A stretch of 64,000 nt of DNA from Guillardia theta CCMP2712 (taxonomy: Eukaryota > Protista > Cryptophyta): NCBI RefSeq assembly GCF_000315625.1, contig NW_005434670.1, forward strand, positions 480,127 to 544,126, read 5' to 3'. The notes under the pieces were generated by a model. That model searched no databases and was not told the DNA's origin. It was given only the letters and a program-made list of their open reading frames with translations. Below, piece after piece: positions 1-7,606 of the stretch. The stretch's first letter is position 1; each line of letters begins with the position of its first letter. Position numbers and translations under genes: made by a program.

Positions 1-105
1 AGCCTCCTGGGAACCCAGATTTGTTTTGTGTAAAAGCATTTCTTTTTCTTGTTGTCCCTCGCTGGTCGCATCAAGAGCAGCTGATAAGAGGAGGGAGGTC
101 GAGGA

Positions 106-320
106 CGAGAGGGAGAGAGAGGGAGAGAGAGGGAGAGAGAGGGAGAGAGAGGGAGAGAGAGGGAGAGAGAGGGAGAGAGAGGGAGAGAGAGGGAGAGAGA
201 GGGAGAGAGAGGGAGAGAGAGGGAGAGACAGACAGACAGACAGACAGACAGAGAAAGAGAAAGAGAGACAGAGACAGACAGAGAGAAAGAGAGACAGAGA
301 CAGACAGACAGAGAGACAGA
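106..320. repeat. GA-rich simple repeat, (GAGGGAGAGA)n then (GACA/GAGA)n
   Basis: Direct tandem 10-mer followed by GACA/GA arrays. ORFs 21..398 and 26..379 are artefacts of it. Confidence 0.95.
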
Positions 321-503
321 AGGAGGATATCAAGCGAAGAGCGTGGCGGAGGGGAGGAATACGGAGGATATTTGCATAGGATGAAGAAGACGAGATGAGC
401 TCTGATTCGAATATGAGAGAGAAGGGAATGAAGTAAAACAGCAAAAGAGCACTGAAAGCAGCAGTCTGGAGCCCCAGCGCGGTGGGAAGACGGCGGGGCA
501 AAG

Positions 504-3500
504 ATGCGCTACGAAACGTCATGGGAGAAAACCAAGCAAGGCGGCAGAGCAACCAGCAATGGAGAACGGCAACCGTCAAGATCCGGTCTCTCCTATGCCG
601 CGACATCTGCCTGGGCTCTGGTCTTGCTGCTATCGCCTGCTTTCTTGCACGAGATTACAGCGATGAAGCCGATCGGCGTCAGGTTCAAGGTGCTGTGACA
701 TGCGCTGTGATGAGAGGGAGTGAAGGAGCTTCAGGGTGGCGAAAGGAAGGCAGGAGTCCTTCAGTCGCTCATTCACGTGATCTCACAGCGAAATTTCAAG
801 AGGAGGATACGCAGCCATGGGCCGCATCTGCTGCCCGAGAGACTTCGACTTCGGGGGTCGGGGGATGATGACGGTGAATGTTTGAGAGGGAGTAGCTCCT
901 CTTACGATACCGCAGTCGATCTCTTCGAGGGACTGATGGAGTCACAAGGCAGTCACGAGTTCCTCGGGGAAGCTTTTCGAAATGGCACGGAGAGCATTAA
1001 GGAGCAGGCTGTGGGGTATATGTCTATCATGATGCAGGAGTATCGCTTCTTTGGTCGATTCACCGCAAAGAAGCTGCTGTCAAGTATTTCAATGACGTGA
1101 ACTCCCAAAGATTGTTGCTCATCATACCCCGCAGCCGCGAACATGTTCCCAGTATTGTTTGAAGCGAGCATTGAGTAACGCAGCGGGCGATTGTTTTATT
1201 CCTGCTCACTGATTTTTTGCGATGCAGCAAAATGCTGGAAGACAAGAAGCAGTTCTCTGAATCTTTTCTAGCGGTAAAAGTTTTCAACACCTCACTGTTG
1301 AACTTCTGCTCATCCTTACCTCAGGTCCTAGAAGACCTGCCCAACACCATCAGCGACTGGATCAGCCAGTACCTGGTCGCTGGACCATGGTTCAAGACTG
1401 CAACGAGATCTGTGCGACCATGTTTGAGGCCACCCGGCGCTTTTTTGACTTGCCTCGGCAGGAGTACAACACTCAGTTCATTCATGAGGCGGTGTTCAAG
1501 TTGTTTGGGCCCGAGCAGCTGCGCAGGTGAAGCTCCTCCTCCTCCAGCTTGCAGAGGTGACGAGAGGTCCCCAGGCACCTGCTGGGATCAAACTTGTGGA
1601 GCAGCAGAGATCTGACAGACACGCTGCTGGGATCTTTCATCAGGTCTGAGAGCTTCCTATTGCTTCTTCGTGGTGACCTATCTTATTCTCAGATTCTCCG
1701 TGACGGATGCGGTCGCCAATAACGAGGATTATAGGAAACGCCTGTTTGGTCAGAGCGACCTGACTGTATCAGAGCAACTGCACTGCATTGGCTATCGTAA
1801 CACTCGTTCTTGACCTAGGTACTGGAAACCATGGTGCTTTCAGAGTCGAACAACGTGTCGACAAATTGTGAGGAAATTTTGGTAGTTGACAATTCATTTG
1901 ATTGCGATGCACCTCTGAGATATTCTCGCAGAAAGAAAATGCGGCGTTGTTTCAGTCTTTCTTGCAATACTTACCAAATGTACACTTGCCTTCATTTGGA
2001 TAAGATGTCACTTGACGCAATTCGTTGAAGGAAACTGATCAATGGATTACTTCCTTCTTGACAGAGGCGCAGAAGAGAACAACAGAAGCAGCCAAAATGT
2101 GACAGGGATGAACCCTCTGCTTTATTGGTTGACATTCCGAATTTATCAGGTTGATGTTGGATACTCCTGTGGTGACGGTCAGATCAAGTCCGCGAGGATT
2201 TCATCCTACTTATCGTCTTCTTTCTGCCACAGGATGCAGCAGCGTTGAATTTCCTCGACCTGATGCTGAGAAGCCACGAGATTATCAAGAACAAGAGGAA
2301 ATTCGGGTACTTATCTCTCCAACAGGCTTGCAACAAAAACGTTGACTGGACCCGCAGAGATCTTCGCTTGAGAGACACAACAGAAACATTCAGTGAGCGA
2401 GGACTTGCACAGCCATGGCGGCTTGCCAATGTGAGAAACTTTTGCAGACGATCAGGAGGAAGAGATAAAGGGCGTGATTGATTGGTCGTACTGCTATGAT
2501 AAGGTGAAGAGCAGAATTTCTTCAAGAGCCTTCGCTCCTTAATCACAATTGCAGAACCACAATTTGTTCTCAAAATCCAATCCTCTCTTTCACTCGGTAT
2601 GCTTCTGATAGGCCACGCCCGCCTGTCTGAATGTTTGACAGGATTCAACTGACGAACAAGAGAATATGACGTCCAGCAGTCAAGCTAAAAATGTTTCGCA
2701 AGGTCACGAAAGCTTCACGTCCACCCGATCTCACGTTTGTTGCTGGTGCTCAGAAACGCTCTTCTTCTTCAGAAGCCTTGCTGCCCTCGAATCAGCAGAC
2801 ATCCTGTTAGTGCTGTCGTCATGTGTCGGCCAGTCCTGAATGTTATGATTCAAGGCAATCAGAGTCCTTCGCCAGATATCAGAGCTTGCGAGGGGTTTTG
2901 ACAAAGATCTTTCGATCATGGCATTCAGGGGTTGTAGTGCCTCTATCGGAGTTGTTGTTTTGATGACACGGGAGTCGTGCAGAACAGCTCAGCGATCGAG
3001 TCCTTCTCGGAGAAGAAGCAGTTGATGTTCGAACAAGTCTGTTCTACTCCCCTCTTCTTCCAAGTTCTGATCGAAGTTGTGCAGACTGGCTATCAATCCA
3101 TGCATAAAAACGTCTATTTCTCCTTCCGGCATGTTCCTCCCTCTCCCTTCATTGTCTCTCTCTCTTCTCTTTGTGCATTGATGGCCAGGACGCTTCCTTT
3201 GCTCTTGTGTTCATTCTCTGCACCCTCTTCCGCTCCCCAGCCTTTTTTCGATAGTTGTGTTTACAAGCCTTGAGCAGACTGTTGAAGTTTTGTCAATATG
3301 CCATGAGGATTGCGTTGTTACAGGTATTTCTTTTGCTTGACATCTTTCTTTTTCCCGCTGTCTTCCATGTGGAAGTCTGACTTACTTGCAGAGTGATGAG
3401 GACTTGAGCAAGACACCCGAAAACATCGTAAGTGCCACCAGACATCCAGCTGAACTCTCTCAAGTCACTCGTGACTTCTCGAAGCCATTTTCCTCTTCTT

Positions 3501-6500
3501 GCAAGCGCAATCATCTGACGCGGAGCTCTAGATCTATGCTCTCTGCGACGGCACTCGCCTCTGTGGGCTGATGTTTCCCAAGCTGAATATCCTTGTGATG
3601 CACCTGCAATTCCTGGTCCTTCCTGATCGTTTCGCAGATCCATCAAGAAGGGCTGGATACCATCTTCTCCTTTCTCTCCCGCTTGGCCTTCAACCCGAAG
3701 CTCGTGAGCTCTGCTGCTGCTATCCGCGACCTGACGAGCCACGAGGTGTCCAACATCTACAACCGCGCCGCTATCGTTCGCGTCCTCTATGGTTTCATCC
3801 CCGTGAAGATGGCCGTTGACATCGGGGGACCGGCCGTGACCTTATTGGATGGAGTGACCATGGTGAGTAAGGGCGAGGAGGGCGGAGAAGAGCCAAGAGG
3901 AGTAGAGGAGAATTGAAGAAGGATCGGGACGAGAGGAGGAGCAAGGGGAGGGAGGGAAGCGAGGGCACTTGTTCACTTGCTCTCTCCAGGGCCGGGCGAA
4001 GTTGATGCCGATGCTGATGCGCCACTTTGTGGACTTGGAGGCGCTGGGATCAGACGACATGTGAACTTGACTCGTTGCTGAGACGAAGTGACTCCCCCGC
4101 AGCAACAGCAACAGGAAGTTCGGCTACCGCACGCACGTGCTCGTCCTCATGGACTATCTGTGAGGCCACGGGGAGGAGCGAGGGCTGGCTGACGAGGCTC
4201 AGGTGGGAGAACGAAGGGAAGTTCCATCAGGACATGTTTGCTGCGCATGTGCAAGAGAACCCGATGGACTTCGTTCGCTTCTATAACTCTCTCCTCAACG
4301 ACCTGAGCTTCTGCTTCGATCACGCTTTCGAGGGCATCGAGTCGATCCATCAAATGGAGACTGCCGTGCCGGATCCCAACGAGCAACCCATCGAAACCTT
4401 CCTCCGCAGGACAGAAGAGTTCTCGAGGTGAGGGGAGCCGAAGACCCTAATGTAGGAGGAGCAGAAGGAGGAGCAGGAGAGGGAGAGGGTCAGGGAGGAG
4501 TTGAGGCGGGGGCAGGAATAGAGGAGGGCGACTCTTTCTCATGTGCTCTTAGACGAGAATATTGGCAATCTCGTTGCTCGGCTCTCATGGTTTACGGGGC
4601 TGACATGCTGATGATCACGTGAGTCCTCTTGTGTCAGCCATGCGATCTCCCCCTCCTCTCTCTCTGTCTCTGTCTCTGTCTCTGCCTCTGCCTCTGTCTC
4701 TGTCTCTCTCTGTCTCTGTCTCTGTCTCTCTTTCTCTCTCTCTGCCTTTCACTCCCTCCTCTTCTCCCTTCTCTCTCCCTCCTCTTCTCATGGTCATCTT
4801 CTCCGTGCCAACTCTTTTTGCTAGTGATCTGAACGACTTTTCAGCAAGAGATTCATTGACAGGAAGAGTGACGCGTTTCTATCTGAGCACTTGGTGGAAA
4901 GAATTGCATGTAACAAGCTTAATTTTCCTCCTCCAACCTCCTTTCTATTCTATTCCCTTTTTCTTCTGTCCTCCTCCTATTACATTTCTTCCAACACGAA
5001 GCTTTTTCCCACCTTCTCCTGACAACTCTCCGGTCCTCTTACTTTCCTCCTCTTCCCCCCCCNNNNNNNNNNNNNNNNNNNNNNNNNNNNNNNNNNNNNN
5101 NNNNNNNNNNNNNNNNNNNNNNNNNNNNNNNNNNNNNNNNNNNNNNNNNNNNNNNNNNNNNNTAAAACCAGAAACTTTCTACCATTTTTCCAAAGAACAC
5201 TCCAGGTTCTTTTCTTAACTTTTTACACCCCCCCCCCCACCCCCCCCCCTCTCTTCCTCCTTTCTTCCTCCCCCTCTCCATGTCTTTTCCTCCCTTTCAC
5301 CTCCCTCTCTGACGTCTACTCAGCCTTCATGGTGAGAATGGTCGACCGGCTTGTCGGTCAGTCCTGCAGCAAGTTGAAGATCAAGGACCCGAAGGCCTTC
5401 TGCTTTGAGCCTCGTCACATCCTGACCCTCTCGTTGAGGTGCATAACCTGTTTGTGCACCATGCGTGTCTCAACGCAGGCAGGTCCCTGCTGGCCATGAG
5501 CGCACACGAGAAGTTTCTTGCCGTCTTTGTGAAGGACCCGCAGCTGCTCAACGAGAAGCTCTTCTTCAAGACTTGTACGTCCCTTCCCCTCCCCCTCGCC
5601 TTCCCTTCCTCTCTCCCTCTCTCTTCTTCAAGACTTGTACGTCCCTTCCCCTCCCCCTCTCCTCTGCTTTCCTCTTCTCCAAGACTCATCTATCCCTTCC
5701 CATCTTGCCGCTTCTTTCCTTCTCCTTGTTCTTCCTTCCCTCTTCTCACTCAGTTCACTTCGCCTTCCCCTCGTCGCACATGCGCCTCTTTCCCATGTGA
5801 GTCGCAGCTGAAAAGCCTCTCAGGCGATCTCTTGTCCAAGAAGAGCGTGCTGAGTGAGGAGGAGAGGAGGAAATTCCAGGAGATCTGGGGGAAGATCGCA
5901 AGTCTCTCAGAGGAGCAGGTAGACCTCCTGACAGGGGAGGAGGTGGAGGAGACGCAAGGGAACGGGACTGAAGTCTCCTGTGGCAGATGGACGAGGACGT
6001 GCTGATCGATGGGGCGGATGAAGAGTTTTTGGATCCCCTGATGCAGGCAGAGGGTGGGAGAGGTCAAGAGCTGAGAGACTGATGCGAGTGGTAGACCCTC
6101 ATGGTCGACCCCGTCCGTCTGCCTTCCTCGGGAATCATCGCTGACCGCGTCGTCATCACCCGGCACCTCCTCACGGATCCCCACGACCCCTTCAACCGCG
6201 CTCCTCTGACCGGTACCTCATGCTGCGCATGCGTGCTGCTGGAGCAGTTGAGAGCAAGCGCAGAGGAGCAGCTCGTCCCGCAAGAGGCTCTGAAACAGAA
6301 GATCGGAGAGTACAGGTGCGTTGACGGCAAGGAGACAAAGCACAGGAGGAGGCAGGCAGGCAGGCAGGAAGGCAGGAGGCTGGCAGGCAGGAAGGCAGGA
6401 GGCTGGCAGGCAGGAAGGCAGGGCGGGGAGGGGGAAACGGAAAAGAGCGGGGAGGCAGGAAGGGGAAGGCAAGAACGGGAGGGAGATGATCCCACATCAA

Positions 6501-7606
6501 ATTTCAGGGCTCGGAGGATCGCGGAGTGGAGAGAGCTGCGGAAGGAGCAGTCCGCGGTGAGTCACTTTGAAGGAGCACGTTGACTGGTGGTCATTCGCGT
6601 CAACAGGACGGCAAAGGCTCAAACTCTTCATCCCCCGCCGGTCGCTCGTGTGCTGGATTTGACTGGCACGCCTGACGAGTCCCCAGGAGCTGATGGCGAG
6701 CGGGAGAGCAACAAGACGACGAGCGAAGCAGTGGACCTCAACGGAACGAGGGGGAGCATGGAGAGCGACTTCGAGCTCATGACAGAATGCTCTGAAGAGC
6801 ACCGAAGACTCCGACCTATCGAAGGACAAAGGTCCGTCTCGCTCCCCCTTTTCCCTCCTCCTCCCCCCTTCCACCTCTTCCTCTCCCTTTCCTTTGCCAG
6901 TCTCATTTCTCGACTCCCGCGCTCCCATCTCTCCTTGCTCCATGTTGCTGACCTTCCACTACAGTAGGTTCGTGGAGGATGTGGATATGGACGGGATAGA
7001 AAGGGCAGAGGTTGTGGATGAGATGGAAGAAGACGAGGAAGACGAGGACGAGGAAGACGAGGACGAGGAAGACGAGGAGGACGAAGACGAGGAGGGAGAA
7101 TATGAAGTAAGAATTCAAACCTGATCTCTTTTCATCGCTTCTGATCAACGTCATCAAAAGGAATACCCAAGAGAATCAGCTGATTCAAGAAATGTAACAT
7201 TCAGAGGTAATGCAGTCAAAGTCTCATCCCTTGCTGCTCCTGCCTCCCTCCCGCTATTCCCTCCATGAGTCTCTCCCTTTTCAGTGGGACCTACTGGCAG
7301 CACAGTCAATTTCTCAGGTGACTGTCTCCTCCTCCTTCCCTCCTCACCCACGACAGATTTCCGGATGGTCTTCTTGCACAGCGACGGGTCAAAGGTCCAG
7401 CTGCCCTCCAGTTAAGGCTGACACCTTGCAGGTCGTTCAGCAACGAGACGCTGCCCTTGTTTGACTTCGCTTCCATGGGCAACATGTCTCAGATAGAGGT
7501 GAGTGGTTGAGAAAAGCGAGGGGAAGGAGGGGGCAGAGGAGATGGAAGGGTAGGGCAAGACTATGTTGAGTCTGAGAGCGAGCAGGTGGACCAGGAAGGC
7601 CATTGA
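504..7606 (+). CDS. UFD2: Ubiquitin conjugation factor E4 (Ufd2P core + U-box), multi-exon, with N-terminal presequence and acidic C-terminal extension
   Basis: Ufd2 core peptides [30 protein letters not shown] (about 4270-4360) and [25 protein letters not shown] (about 5350-5425). Spliced U-box EEFLDPLMQ|[39 protein letters not shown]|[14 protein letters not shown] (about 6020-6305). Phase-consistent exons continue to TGA at 7604-7606. Start and some middle exons are uncertain, and the gene spans the gap at 5063-5162. Confidence 0.9.
4655..4745. repeat. (TCTCTG/TC)n intronic microsatellite
   Basis: Direct reading; lies inside a long UFD2 intron. Confidence 0.9.
5063..5162. other. Assembly gap (100 N)
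   Basis: N run. Confidence 1.

What the first reader, a model, noticed from the sequence alone, without database searches (positions are those of the whole stretch)
504..870. UFD2/E4 ubiquitin ligase with a bipartite-like presequence ending in a ubiquitin-tail mimic (LRLRGSG): candidate periplastid-compartment E4
Seen: exons 504-689 and 735 onward splice in phase to a hydrophobic stretch ([19 protein letters not shown]), an Arg/Lys-rich segment (MKPIGVRFK|GGERKAG...[11 protein letters not shown]), then ERLRLRGSG, then an abrupt switch to acidic sequence (DDD). Established: Ufd2 is normally cytosolic or nuclear with no signal peptide. Complex-plastid algae import proteins to the periplastid compartment (PPC) via signal+transit peptides and run a symbiont-derived ERAD-like machinery (SELMA) there. 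LRLRGG is the C-terminus of ubiquitin that deubiquitinases cleave. Inference: a host-encoded Cdc48-partner E4 for the PPC ubiquitin system, whose presequence may be clipped at a ubiquitin-like site. I do not recall Ufd2 among described SELMA factors, but cannot check. Caveats: long n-region, GS instead of GG, and an alternative cleavage SPA|F that would predict stroma.
Basis: partly seen in the sequence, partly recalled or inferred. Interest (0 to 1): 0.72.

Follow-up and report, generated by a model that had tools for sequence, protein, structure and literature searches.

The report
Ufd2 E4 ligase with periplastid-type leader
A cryptophyte alga (Guillardia theta) has a second, very divergent copy of the ubiquitin chain-extending enzyme Ufd2 that begins with an import leader ending in a conserved near-copy of ubiquitin's tail (RLRLRGSG), so it is probably sent into the remnant cytoplasm around the plastid, where no such enzyme has been described.

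Summary
Spliced RNA contigs from three studies join 345-689 to 735-873 and on to the Ufd2 core.

The gene (504-6583, about 997 aa) has a Ufd2 core and an E4-type U-box. The genome also holds a canonical Ufd2.

In the related cryptophyte Hanusia phi the leader is only 29% identical, yet RLRLRGSG is 8 of 8 identical and lies where the 89%-identical body begins.

My own test: 14 of 20 sampled LRLRGG sites in this genome end a leader of Met, hydrophobic stretch and spacer. Their cargo includes eEF1A and alpha-glucan phosphorylase. The scan reported this leader class before on other DNA of this genome.

The Ufd2 leader is atypical for that class: a 32-aa part before the hydrophobic stretch, a spacer of about 50 aa, and GSG instead of GG.

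Best reading: a periplastid-targeted E4 (about 0.55). Cleavage at the motif is less sure. I ran no trained signal-peptide predictor or phylogeny, and there is no localisation data.

The parts
345..503 (+). 5' UTR as far as it was laid. The transcript contigs run about 100-120 nt further upstream into the GA/GACA repeat. It contains short uORFs at 381-398 and 395-436.
   Evidence: window 345 corresponds to position 120 of the X2 contig. Sequence.
504..689 (+). Coding exon 1 (aa 1-62). It holds a hydrophilic part before the hydrophobic stretch (aa 1-32, 504-599), the hydrophobic stretch (aa 33-48, 600-647) and the start of the basic spacer.
690..734 (+). Intron 1, 45 nt, GT..AG.
   Evidence: joint 687/733 in runs X1, X2 and X9.
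735..873 (+). Coding exon 2 (aa 63-109). It holds the Lys/Arg-rich spacer, then RLRLRGSG, then DDD.
840..863 (+). RLRLRGSG (aa 98-105), the ubiquitin-tail-like motif at the border between leader and body.
   Evidence: Identical in Hanusia phi fragment P0007. RNA contigs show no differing letters here.
874..915 (+). Intron 2, 42 nt, in frame and without a stop.
   Evidence: joint 872/915. It is unalignable with H. phi (1/15 identical).
916..1083 (+). Coding exon 3, the start of the conserved body ([34 protein letters not shown]...).
   Evidence: It is 50/56 identical to H. phi.
1084..6583 (+). Rest of the gene. Many short exons hold the Ufd2 core (for example 4203-4427 and 5324-5438) and the U-box (5987-6046, 6095-6212, 6264-6315). 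The stop is TGA at 6581-6583. The model gives 997 aa. Exon borders within 2930-3594 are unresolved, and borders after 4552 are inferred without listed RNA joints.

Best explanation
This is a nucleus-encoded, highly divergent paralogue of the U-box E4 ubiquitin ligase Ufd2 in the cryptophyte Guillardia theta. It carries an N-terminal leader of about 105 residues of the kind that sends proteins into the periplastid compartment (PPC), the remnant cytoplasm of the red-algal endosymbiont.

Proposed route (all steps inferred):
1. The recessed hydrophobic stretch (aa 33-48) takes the nascent chain into the ER lumen.
2. The Lys/Arg-rich spacer (aa 49-97) serves as the transit-peptide-like part that the SELMA translocon carries across the periplastid membrane.
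3. The conserved RLRLRGSG marks the end of the leader, where it is removed or recognised.
4. The mature protein of about 890 aa, with an acidic N-terminus, acts in the PPC with the nucleomorph-encoded Cdc48/Ufd1 and the PPC proteasome to lengthen ubiquitin chains.

Shown here: the transcript structure, the Ufd2 core and U-box, the existence of a second canonical Ufd2, conservation of the motif, and the reality and PPC-type cargo of the LRLRGG leader class.

Inferred: signal-peptide function, PPC location, cleavage, E4 activity and partners.
For: 1. Spliced RNA contigs from three studies join the leader exons to the Ufd2 core in one transcript of about 3.5 kb.
2. Pfam finds Ufd2P_core (1.6e-9 and 2.3e-5) and U-box (8.5e-15) on separate exons. 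The U-box is closest to solved UBE4A, UBE4B and Ufd2 structures, and the core exon aligns to yeast Ufd2 residues 666-704.
3. The genome has a separate canonical Ufd2 with a U-box on C36 (356 bits to the core model). The third core hit, on C14, is fused to an E2 domain and is not a U-box E4.
4. In Hanusia phi fragment P0007, the leader is 10/35 identical, RLRLRGSG is 8/8, and the following exon is 50/56.
5. My own sample covered the first 20 genomic sites that truly encode LRLRGG. In 14 of them, Met, a hydrophobic stretch, a spacer of 8-83 aa and the motif lie in one open frame.
6. The genes behind these leaders include eEF1A, where the motif abuts the normal GKEK N-terminus, and alpha-glucan phosphorylase, fitting the periplastid site of cryptophyte starch (my recall of Deschamps et al. 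2006; paper not opened). An H2A-like histone is also among them, but only by eye: Pfam gave no hit on it.
7. The spacer has four lysines and net charge about +8, with few acidic residues.
8. The core exon found only 5 relatives at E<=0.001 among 1.8 billion representatives. The protein is therefore a long-diverged paralogue, not a recent copy.
Against: - The hydrophobic stretch starts 32 residues from the Met. In the 14 comparable leaders the Met nearest the hydrophobic window lies 17 residues or fewer upstream of it. Its hydrophobicity (best 9-residue window 2.40) is at the low end of the class, which ranges 1.93-3.71.
- The motif is GSG, not GG. LRLRGxG is not enriched genome-wide (63 hits against 59 for the control), and only one other LRLRGSG site looks leader-like.
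- A plausible signal-peptidase site, SPA|F, would place Phe at +1, which is the stromal mark.
- Four upstream ATGs precede ATG504.
- The leader's first exon found no counterpart in H. phi. That search was blank, and it only sees short proteins.
- I ran no SignalP or ASAFind, no phylogeny, and there is no localisation.
Confidence: 0.55

Rival explanations
1. Cytosolic or nuclear divergent Ufd2. Translation effectively starts at Met54 (ATG 663) or the hydrophobic stretch has no function. The conserved basic segment (KRR-x11-RLRLR in G. theta, KKRTR-x12-KRLRLR in H. phi) is then a bipartite nuclear localisation signal or a binding motif, not the end of a leader.
For: The part before the hydrophobic stretch is long and atypical, and four uATGs precede ATG504. 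The basic residues K84, R86, R88 and RLRLR are among those conserved with H. phi. Ufd2 and UBE4B are normally cytosolic or nuclear (established knowledge). GSG is not a deubiquitinase site.
Against: A generic nuclear signal would not hold G-S-G and each L/R fixed while the neighbouring residues drift. The motif is one residue away from the LRLRGG that ends about 70% of sampled leader-bearing sites in this genome, and it sits exactly at the start of the conserved body. ATG504 has a purine at -3, and the open frame runs through the hydrophobic stretch.
Confidence: 0.17
2. Membrane-tethered E4 facing the host cytosol. The hydrophobic stretch acts as an uncleaved reverse signal-anchor in the ER or outermost plastid membrane, leaving the positively charged spacer and the ligase body on the cytosolic side, for example for host ERAD.
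For: The positions are recessed. More positive charge lies after the stretch than before it: about +2 against +1 within 15 residues, and +8 over the whole spacer.
Against: The hydrophobic core is only about 14 residues ([13 protein letters not shown]) and contains Ser and Pro. That is the length of a signal peptide, not of a membrane helix. This reading gives no role to the conserved ubiquitin-tail-like motif at the border of the body.
Confidence: 0.13
3. Plastid stroma targeting. Signal peptidase cuts at SPA|F, leaving Phe at +1, the mark that carries cryptophyte and diatom preproteins on across the two inner membranes.
For: The SPA|F arrangement resembles the ASAFAP-type motif described for complex red plastids (PMC12136025).
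Against: No ubiquitin system is known in the stroma. [quoted passage not shown] The alternative site ITA|M is equally possible. The leader ends like the PPC-type class.
Confidence: 0.05

Closest known systems
Ufd2 / UBE4A / UBE4B (U-box E4 ubiquitin chain-elongation factors)
   Same: It has the Ufd2P_core domain and a C-terminal U-box whose closest solved relatives are UBE4A, UBE4B and yeast Ufd2. The overall length (997 aa) is similar to yeast Ufd2 (961 aa).
   Different: It is extremely divergent: the core exon finds only 5 relatives at E<=0.001 in 1.8 billion representatives. It has an N-terminal hydrophobic and basic leader of about 105 aa that canonical Ufd2 lacks. It coexists with a canonical paralogue.
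SELMA / periplastid ubiquitin machinery (sCdc48, sUfd1, sNpl4, sUba1, sUbc, ptE3P, ptDUP, sPUB)
   Same: It would be a nucleus-encoded ubiquitin-system protein imported into the PPC by a bipartite leader, and a known partner type of Cdc48.
   Different: The SELMA component lists I could read contain no E4. Ufd2 is given as host-only in Phaeodactylum (PMC6610115 Table 2) and is absent from the 16 components analysed in PMC12412216. I did not test its function in import as opposed to degradation.
LRLRGG-ended periplastid leaders of Guillardia theta
   Same: Same layout: hydrophobic stretch, then a spacer poor in acidic residues, then a ubiquitin-tail-like motif exactly at the start of the conserved body.
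   Different: The motif is GSG instead of GG. The part before the hydrophobic stretch is 32 aa instead of 17 or fewer. The spacer is about 50 aa (the class is mostly 8-35) and its charge is about +8 (the class ranges -3 to +5).

Membership tests
Ufd2/E4 U-box ligases | Ufd2P_core domain | tested here: met
   PF10408 on exons 4218-4386 (1.6e-9, 37 bits) and 5338-5442 (2.3e-5), both above the 20.4-bit cut-off. The exon also aligns to yeast Ufd2 666-704, but weakly (E 0.08).
Ufd2/E4 U-box ligases | C-terminal U-box of the E4 type | tested here: met
   PF04564 at 8.5e-15. The best solved matches are UBE4A (7e-11), UBE4B and Ufd2. The motif [10 protein letters not shown]|[13 protein letters not shown]...DPFNR is intact across a GC-AG intron.
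Ufd2/E4 U-box ligases | Chain-elongating activity and Cdc48 binding | not testable with these tools
   This needs biochemistry. I sent no complex prediction because the spliced protein has no reference.
Periplastid-targeted proteins (bipartite signal) | Cleavable N-terminal signal peptide | tested here: inconclusive
   The hydrophobic core of about 14 aa is typical of the class in length. It is recessed by 32 aa, and its best 9-residue hydropathy window of 2.40 is at the low end. No trained predictor was available.
Periplastid-targeted proteins (bipartite signal) | Transit-peptide-like part without an aromatic residue at +1 | tested here: inconclusive
   There are two candidate cleavage sites. 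SPA|F would put Phe at +1 (stromal type), and ITA|M would put Met at +1 (PPC type).
Periplastid-targeted proteins (bipartite signal) | Localisation in the PPC | not testable with these tools
   This needs a GFP fusion or fractionation.
LRLRGG-ended leaders of G. theta | Motif LRLRGG (or xLRGG) at the border between leader and body | tested here: not met
   The sequence is RLRLRGSG, with Ser between the glycines. RNA contigs agree with the genome, and the same holds in H. phi. The position at the border is met.
LRLRGG-ended leaders of G. theta | Signal-like hydrophobic stretch near the N-terminus, followed by a short spacer | tested here: inconclusive
   It is present but atypical: 32 aa precede it against 17 or fewer in the class, and the spacer is about 50 aa against mostly 8-35, with one of 83.

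The most novel reading that the evidence does not exclude
Cryptophytes may keep a complete Cdc48-Ufd2-proteasome degradation branch inside the periplastid compartment. Its E4 would enter on a distinct subclass of ubiquitin-tail leaders: a long part before the hydrophobic stretch plus a conserved RLRLRGSG. The interrupted Gly-Gly would make that leader resistant to, or differently handled by, the protease that trims ordinary LRLRGG leaders. The E4 could then keep its leader, or be retained at the periplastid membrane next to SELMA. A second possible case is a TPR protein at G000:C38 with 'LRIRGSG...LRLRGSG' and about 34 aa before its hydrophobic stretch.
Probability: 0.12. Interest if true: 0.8.

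Novelty: new member of a known kind. Interest (0 to 1): 0.55.

Why it matters
SELMA, the import machine of complex red plastids, is an ERAD system re-used for import. Whether the periplastid compartment still couples ubiquitination to degradation is an open point; Stork et al. 2012 predicted 'uncoupling' in lineages without a nucleomorph.

An E4 dedicated to this compartment would be the missing link between periplastid Cdc48 and the nucleomorph-encoded proteasome in cryptophytes. It gives a concrete gene to localise and knock down.

The conserved GSG variant also gives a natural test case for the idea that ubiquitin-tail motifs at the ends of periplastid leaders are protease sites. If leaders are cut by a deubiquitinase-type enzyme, this one should be cut poorly or elsewhere.

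The leader class itself was already reported by this scan on other DNA of this genome, so that part is not new here.

Tried and rejected
- Raw RNA reads (X15): none were laid, only about 6% of the run was read, so this is no test.
- Full exon chain: the borders within 2930-3594 stayed ambiguous. Thousands of GT-AG chains fit the 244 exonic nt, introns can exceed 200 nt, and at least one inferred GC-AG intron (no RNA joint listed for it), so I left this stretch unresolved.
- Big HMMER search with the best core exon: it gave only 5 hits, all fragments. It did not return the gene's own full-length protein, so no reference for the whole protein was obtained.
- Word searches: exon 1 was blank. A profile of the five core fragments added only two more fragments and no taxon names. 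These searches see only proteins of similar length, so the blanks say nothing about full-length orthologues.
- The look-up of encoding contigs for the Hanusia fragment: not on record.
- Positive control with SELMA Npl4: only one NPL4 locus was found. It is the leaderless host type, so it was uninformative.
- LRLRGSG as a common variant: rejected. LRLRGxG gave 63 hits against 59 for the control, there are 7 true LRLRGSG sites, and only one other looks leader-like.
- N-terminus of the canonical C36 Ufd2: not resolved, because an assembly gap lies upstream.
- Stork 2012 and Curtis 2012 are not held in the paper library.
Joined models were built only inside scripts, for frame checks and composition.
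Full report
**What the window is.** The window is G000:C4:480127-544126 of an 87.1-Mb genome in 669 contigs. It has very short GT..AG introns. The closest relative of the gene is a EukProt protein of the cryptophyte Hanusia phi. Earlier notes of this scan name the genome as Guillardia theta.

**Check of the observation.** ATG504 is the first in-frame ATG after a stop at 453-455. I laid Logan contigs of three runs from three studies on 345-4600. Each run has a contig that covers 345-687, skips 45 nt (GT..AG, intron 690-734), covers 733-872, skips 42 nt (intron 874-915) and covers 915-1083. In the two runs (X1, X2) with full-length contigs of about 3.5 kb, the same record continues through many more joints to 4203-4425. 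No letters differ.

The contigs lack the introns, so they come from spliced RNA. Transcripts therefore do not start downstream of 700, and the leader exons do join the Ufd2 core.

There is one correction. The protein reads [32 protein letters not shown] / [16 protein letters not shown] / [49 protein letters not shown] / RLRLRGSG / [24 protein letters not shown]....

The 5' UTR is at least 278 nt long and holds four upstream ATGs. They form two short uORFs, at 381-398 and 395-436.

**The gene.**
- I used the listed joints and the contig coordinates as length constraints to derive the remaining introns up to 2929. The solution was unique, or clearly the best by splice-site score.
- The stretch 2930-3594 holds 244 exonic nt and could not be resolved.
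- The 3' part was modelled by open frame, splice score and homology.
- The frames close. The CDS runs 504..6583 and gives 997 aa. About 249 nt of 3' UTR are left in the contig length.
- Pfam finds Ufd2P_core on two exons and a U-box on a third.
- The U-box exon is closest to solved UBE4A, UBE4B and yeast Ufd2 structures. The core exon aligns to yeast Ufd2 residues 666-704.
- The U-box is split by an inferred GC-AG intron (6047-6094, no RNA joint listed). Its hallmark residues are intact.

**Paralogues.** The genome has three places that match the Ufd2 core.
- C36 is a canonical Ufd2. It scores 356 bits, has a 386-aa exon and carries its own U-box. Its N-terminus could not be resolved because an assembly gap lies upstream.
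- C14 has a core-like region followed by a UBC E2 domain. It is not a U-box E4, and other notes of the scan saw it too.
- The third is the present gene, which is much more divergent. Its best-conserved exon found only five proteins at E<=0.001 among 1.8 billion representatives. These are a Hanusia phi fragment (74% identical), three metagenome fragments that share the motif [13 protein letters not shown], and one unrelated repeat protein (P0003).

**Conservation of the motif.** A word search with 714-1097 returned one protein, Hanusia phi P0007. This ORF reads through the same two introns. Segment by segment:

| Segment | Identity to H. phi |
|---|---|
| Leader part of exon 2 | 10/35 |
| RLRLRGSG | 8/8 |
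| Acidic triplet | DDD against EDD |
| Intron 2 read-through | 1/15 |
| Exon 3 | 50/56 |

At the leader's background identity, an 8/8 block has a probability of about 4e-5 per window, or about 1.6e-3 over the leader. The motif, including its serine, is therefore under selection, and it sits exactly where the conserved body begins. I could not find the Hanusia counterpart of exon 1. That search cannot see long proteins, so the blank means little.

**Is a ubiquitin-tail leader a real thing in this genome?** Earlier notes of this scan say so. I tested it myself.
- The degenerate pattern for LRLRGG occurs 353 times, against 255 for the reversed control.
- I took the first 20 hits whose codons truly spell L-R-L-R-G-G. 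In 14 of them, Met, a hydrophobic stretch, a spacer of 8-83 aa and the motif lie in one open frame. None is a ubiquitin gene.
- Downstream of these leaders lie eEF1A, where the motif is followed directly by GKEKHH..VVIGHVDSGKSTT, the normal N-terminus of eEF1A.
- They also include alpha-glucan phosphorylase, a zinc-knuckle protein, a methyltransferase, an alpha/beta hydrolase and a TPR protein. By eye there is also an H2A-type histone ([34 protein letters not shown]), but Pfam gave no hit on that ORF at E<=0.001.
- An elongation factor (and a histone, if the H2A reading holds) behind a signal peptide make sense only for the periplastid compartment and nucleomorph. By my recall (Deschamps et al. 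2006, not opened here), cryptophyte starch lies there too, which fits the phosphorylase.
- Scaling the sample gives roughly 200 such leaders genome-wide, in line with the earlier notes.

**How the Ufd2 leader compares with that class.** It has the same order of parts, but it is an outlier.

| Feature | Ufd2 leader | LRLRGG class |
|---|---|---|
| Residues from the Met to the best 9-residue hydrophobic window (the stretch itself starts at aa 33, after 32 residues) | 39 | 17 or fewer |
| Best 9-residue hydropathy | 2.40 | 1.93-3.71 |
| Spacer length | about 50 aa | mostly 8-35, one of 83 |
| Net charge of spacer | about +8 | -3 to +5 |
| Motif | GSG | GG |

LRLRGxG is not enriched in the genome (63 hits against 59). 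Of the seven true LRLRGSG sites, only one other looks like a leader. That one is a TPR protein on C38, and it too has about 34 aa before its hydrophobic stretch.

**Literature.**
- No paper in the library holds 'periplastid' together with 'LRGG', or Guillardia together with periplastid and U-box.
- Ufd2 appears with 'periplastid' only in a table taken from Stork et al. 2012. There it is host-only in Phaeodactylum and has no symbiont name.
- The 2025 phylogeny of 16 SELMA components has no E4. It notes that cryptophytes lack ptDUP and often replaced SELMA ubiquitination genes by duplicates of host ERAD genes.
- The diatom PPC survey lists no Ufd2.
- I could not open Stork 2012 or Curtis 2012. 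A mention of a Guillardia periplastid Ufd2 in their tables or supplements cannot be excluded.

**Reading.** The best-supported explanation is a periplastid-targeted E4 (about 0.55). The arguments are:
- the class-like architecture of the leader;
- the conserved ubiquitin-tail-like block at the border of the body;
- a separate canonical Ufd2 for the host cytosol;
- the presence in the cryptophyte periplastid compartment of Cdc48, Ufd1 and proteasome genes (established knowledge; PMC12412216 for Cdc48 and Ufd1).

Cleavage by a deubiquitinase-type enzyme at the motif is less likely for this protein than for GG leaders, at about one in three. The serine occupies the place of ubiquitin's Gly76.

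The rivals are a cytosolic or nuclear isoform in which the basic block is a bipartite nuclear signal (0.17), a membrane-anchored E4 facing the host cytosol (0.13), and stromal targeting through SPA|F (0.05).

Searches were done exon by exon, by reference. Joined models existed only inside scripts, for frame checks and composition.

**Verdict.** The leader class was already found by this scan on other DNA. What is new here is the E4 cargo and the conserved GSG variant.

Noticed in passing
window 100-330: There is a long (GAGAGAGGGA)n then (GACA)n microsatellite directly upstream of the gene. The transcript contigs extend into it, so it is part of the 5' UTR or promoter.
   Followed up: no
window 381-436: Two overlapping short uORFs (381-398 and 395-436) precede the main start at 504. 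They may throttle translation or favour downstream starts.
   Followed up: no
window 6047-6094: A GC-AG intron of 48 nt splits the U-box between [10 protein letters not shown] and TLMVDPV. It is the only way to keep the frame.
   Followed up: partly
window 5561-5597 and 5622-5658: A direct duplication of about 37 nt includes the end of an exon and its donor site (cttcttcaagacttgtacgtccc...). This gives two possible donors.
   Followed up: no
G000:C38 about 390041-391160 (L027, L049): A TPR-repeat protein has a leader with about 34 aa before its hydrophobic stretch (FLLLVFLLPPLV) and 'MLRIRGSG...LRLRGSG'. This is a second possible GSG-type leader with the same long start.
   Followed up: partly
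G000:C14:106346-109783 (L003): A Ufd2-core-like region is followed in the same ORF by a UBC (E2) domain instead of a U-box. Other first-stage notes also recorded it.
   Followed up: partly
G000:C3:1062600-1065350 (L039), G000:C1:1197400-1200100 (L033), G000:C4:101280-103980 (L041): eEF1A and alpha-glucan phosphorylase each carry a signal-like stretch, a spacer and LRLRGG directly before the normal start of the protein. An H2A-like histone appears to do the same, identified by eye only (no Pfam hit).
   Followed up: partly
window about 43594, minus strand: '...GEQGYLLLRGG|DPDPGEG' follows a long hydrophilic stretch. No signal-like part was seen in the same frame, so it may be chance or an upstream exon was missed.
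   Followed up: no
window 6970-7100: A strongly acidic ORF (…[26 protein letters not shown]…) lies just downstream of the gene's 3' end. I did not determine what gene it belongs to.
   Followed up: no
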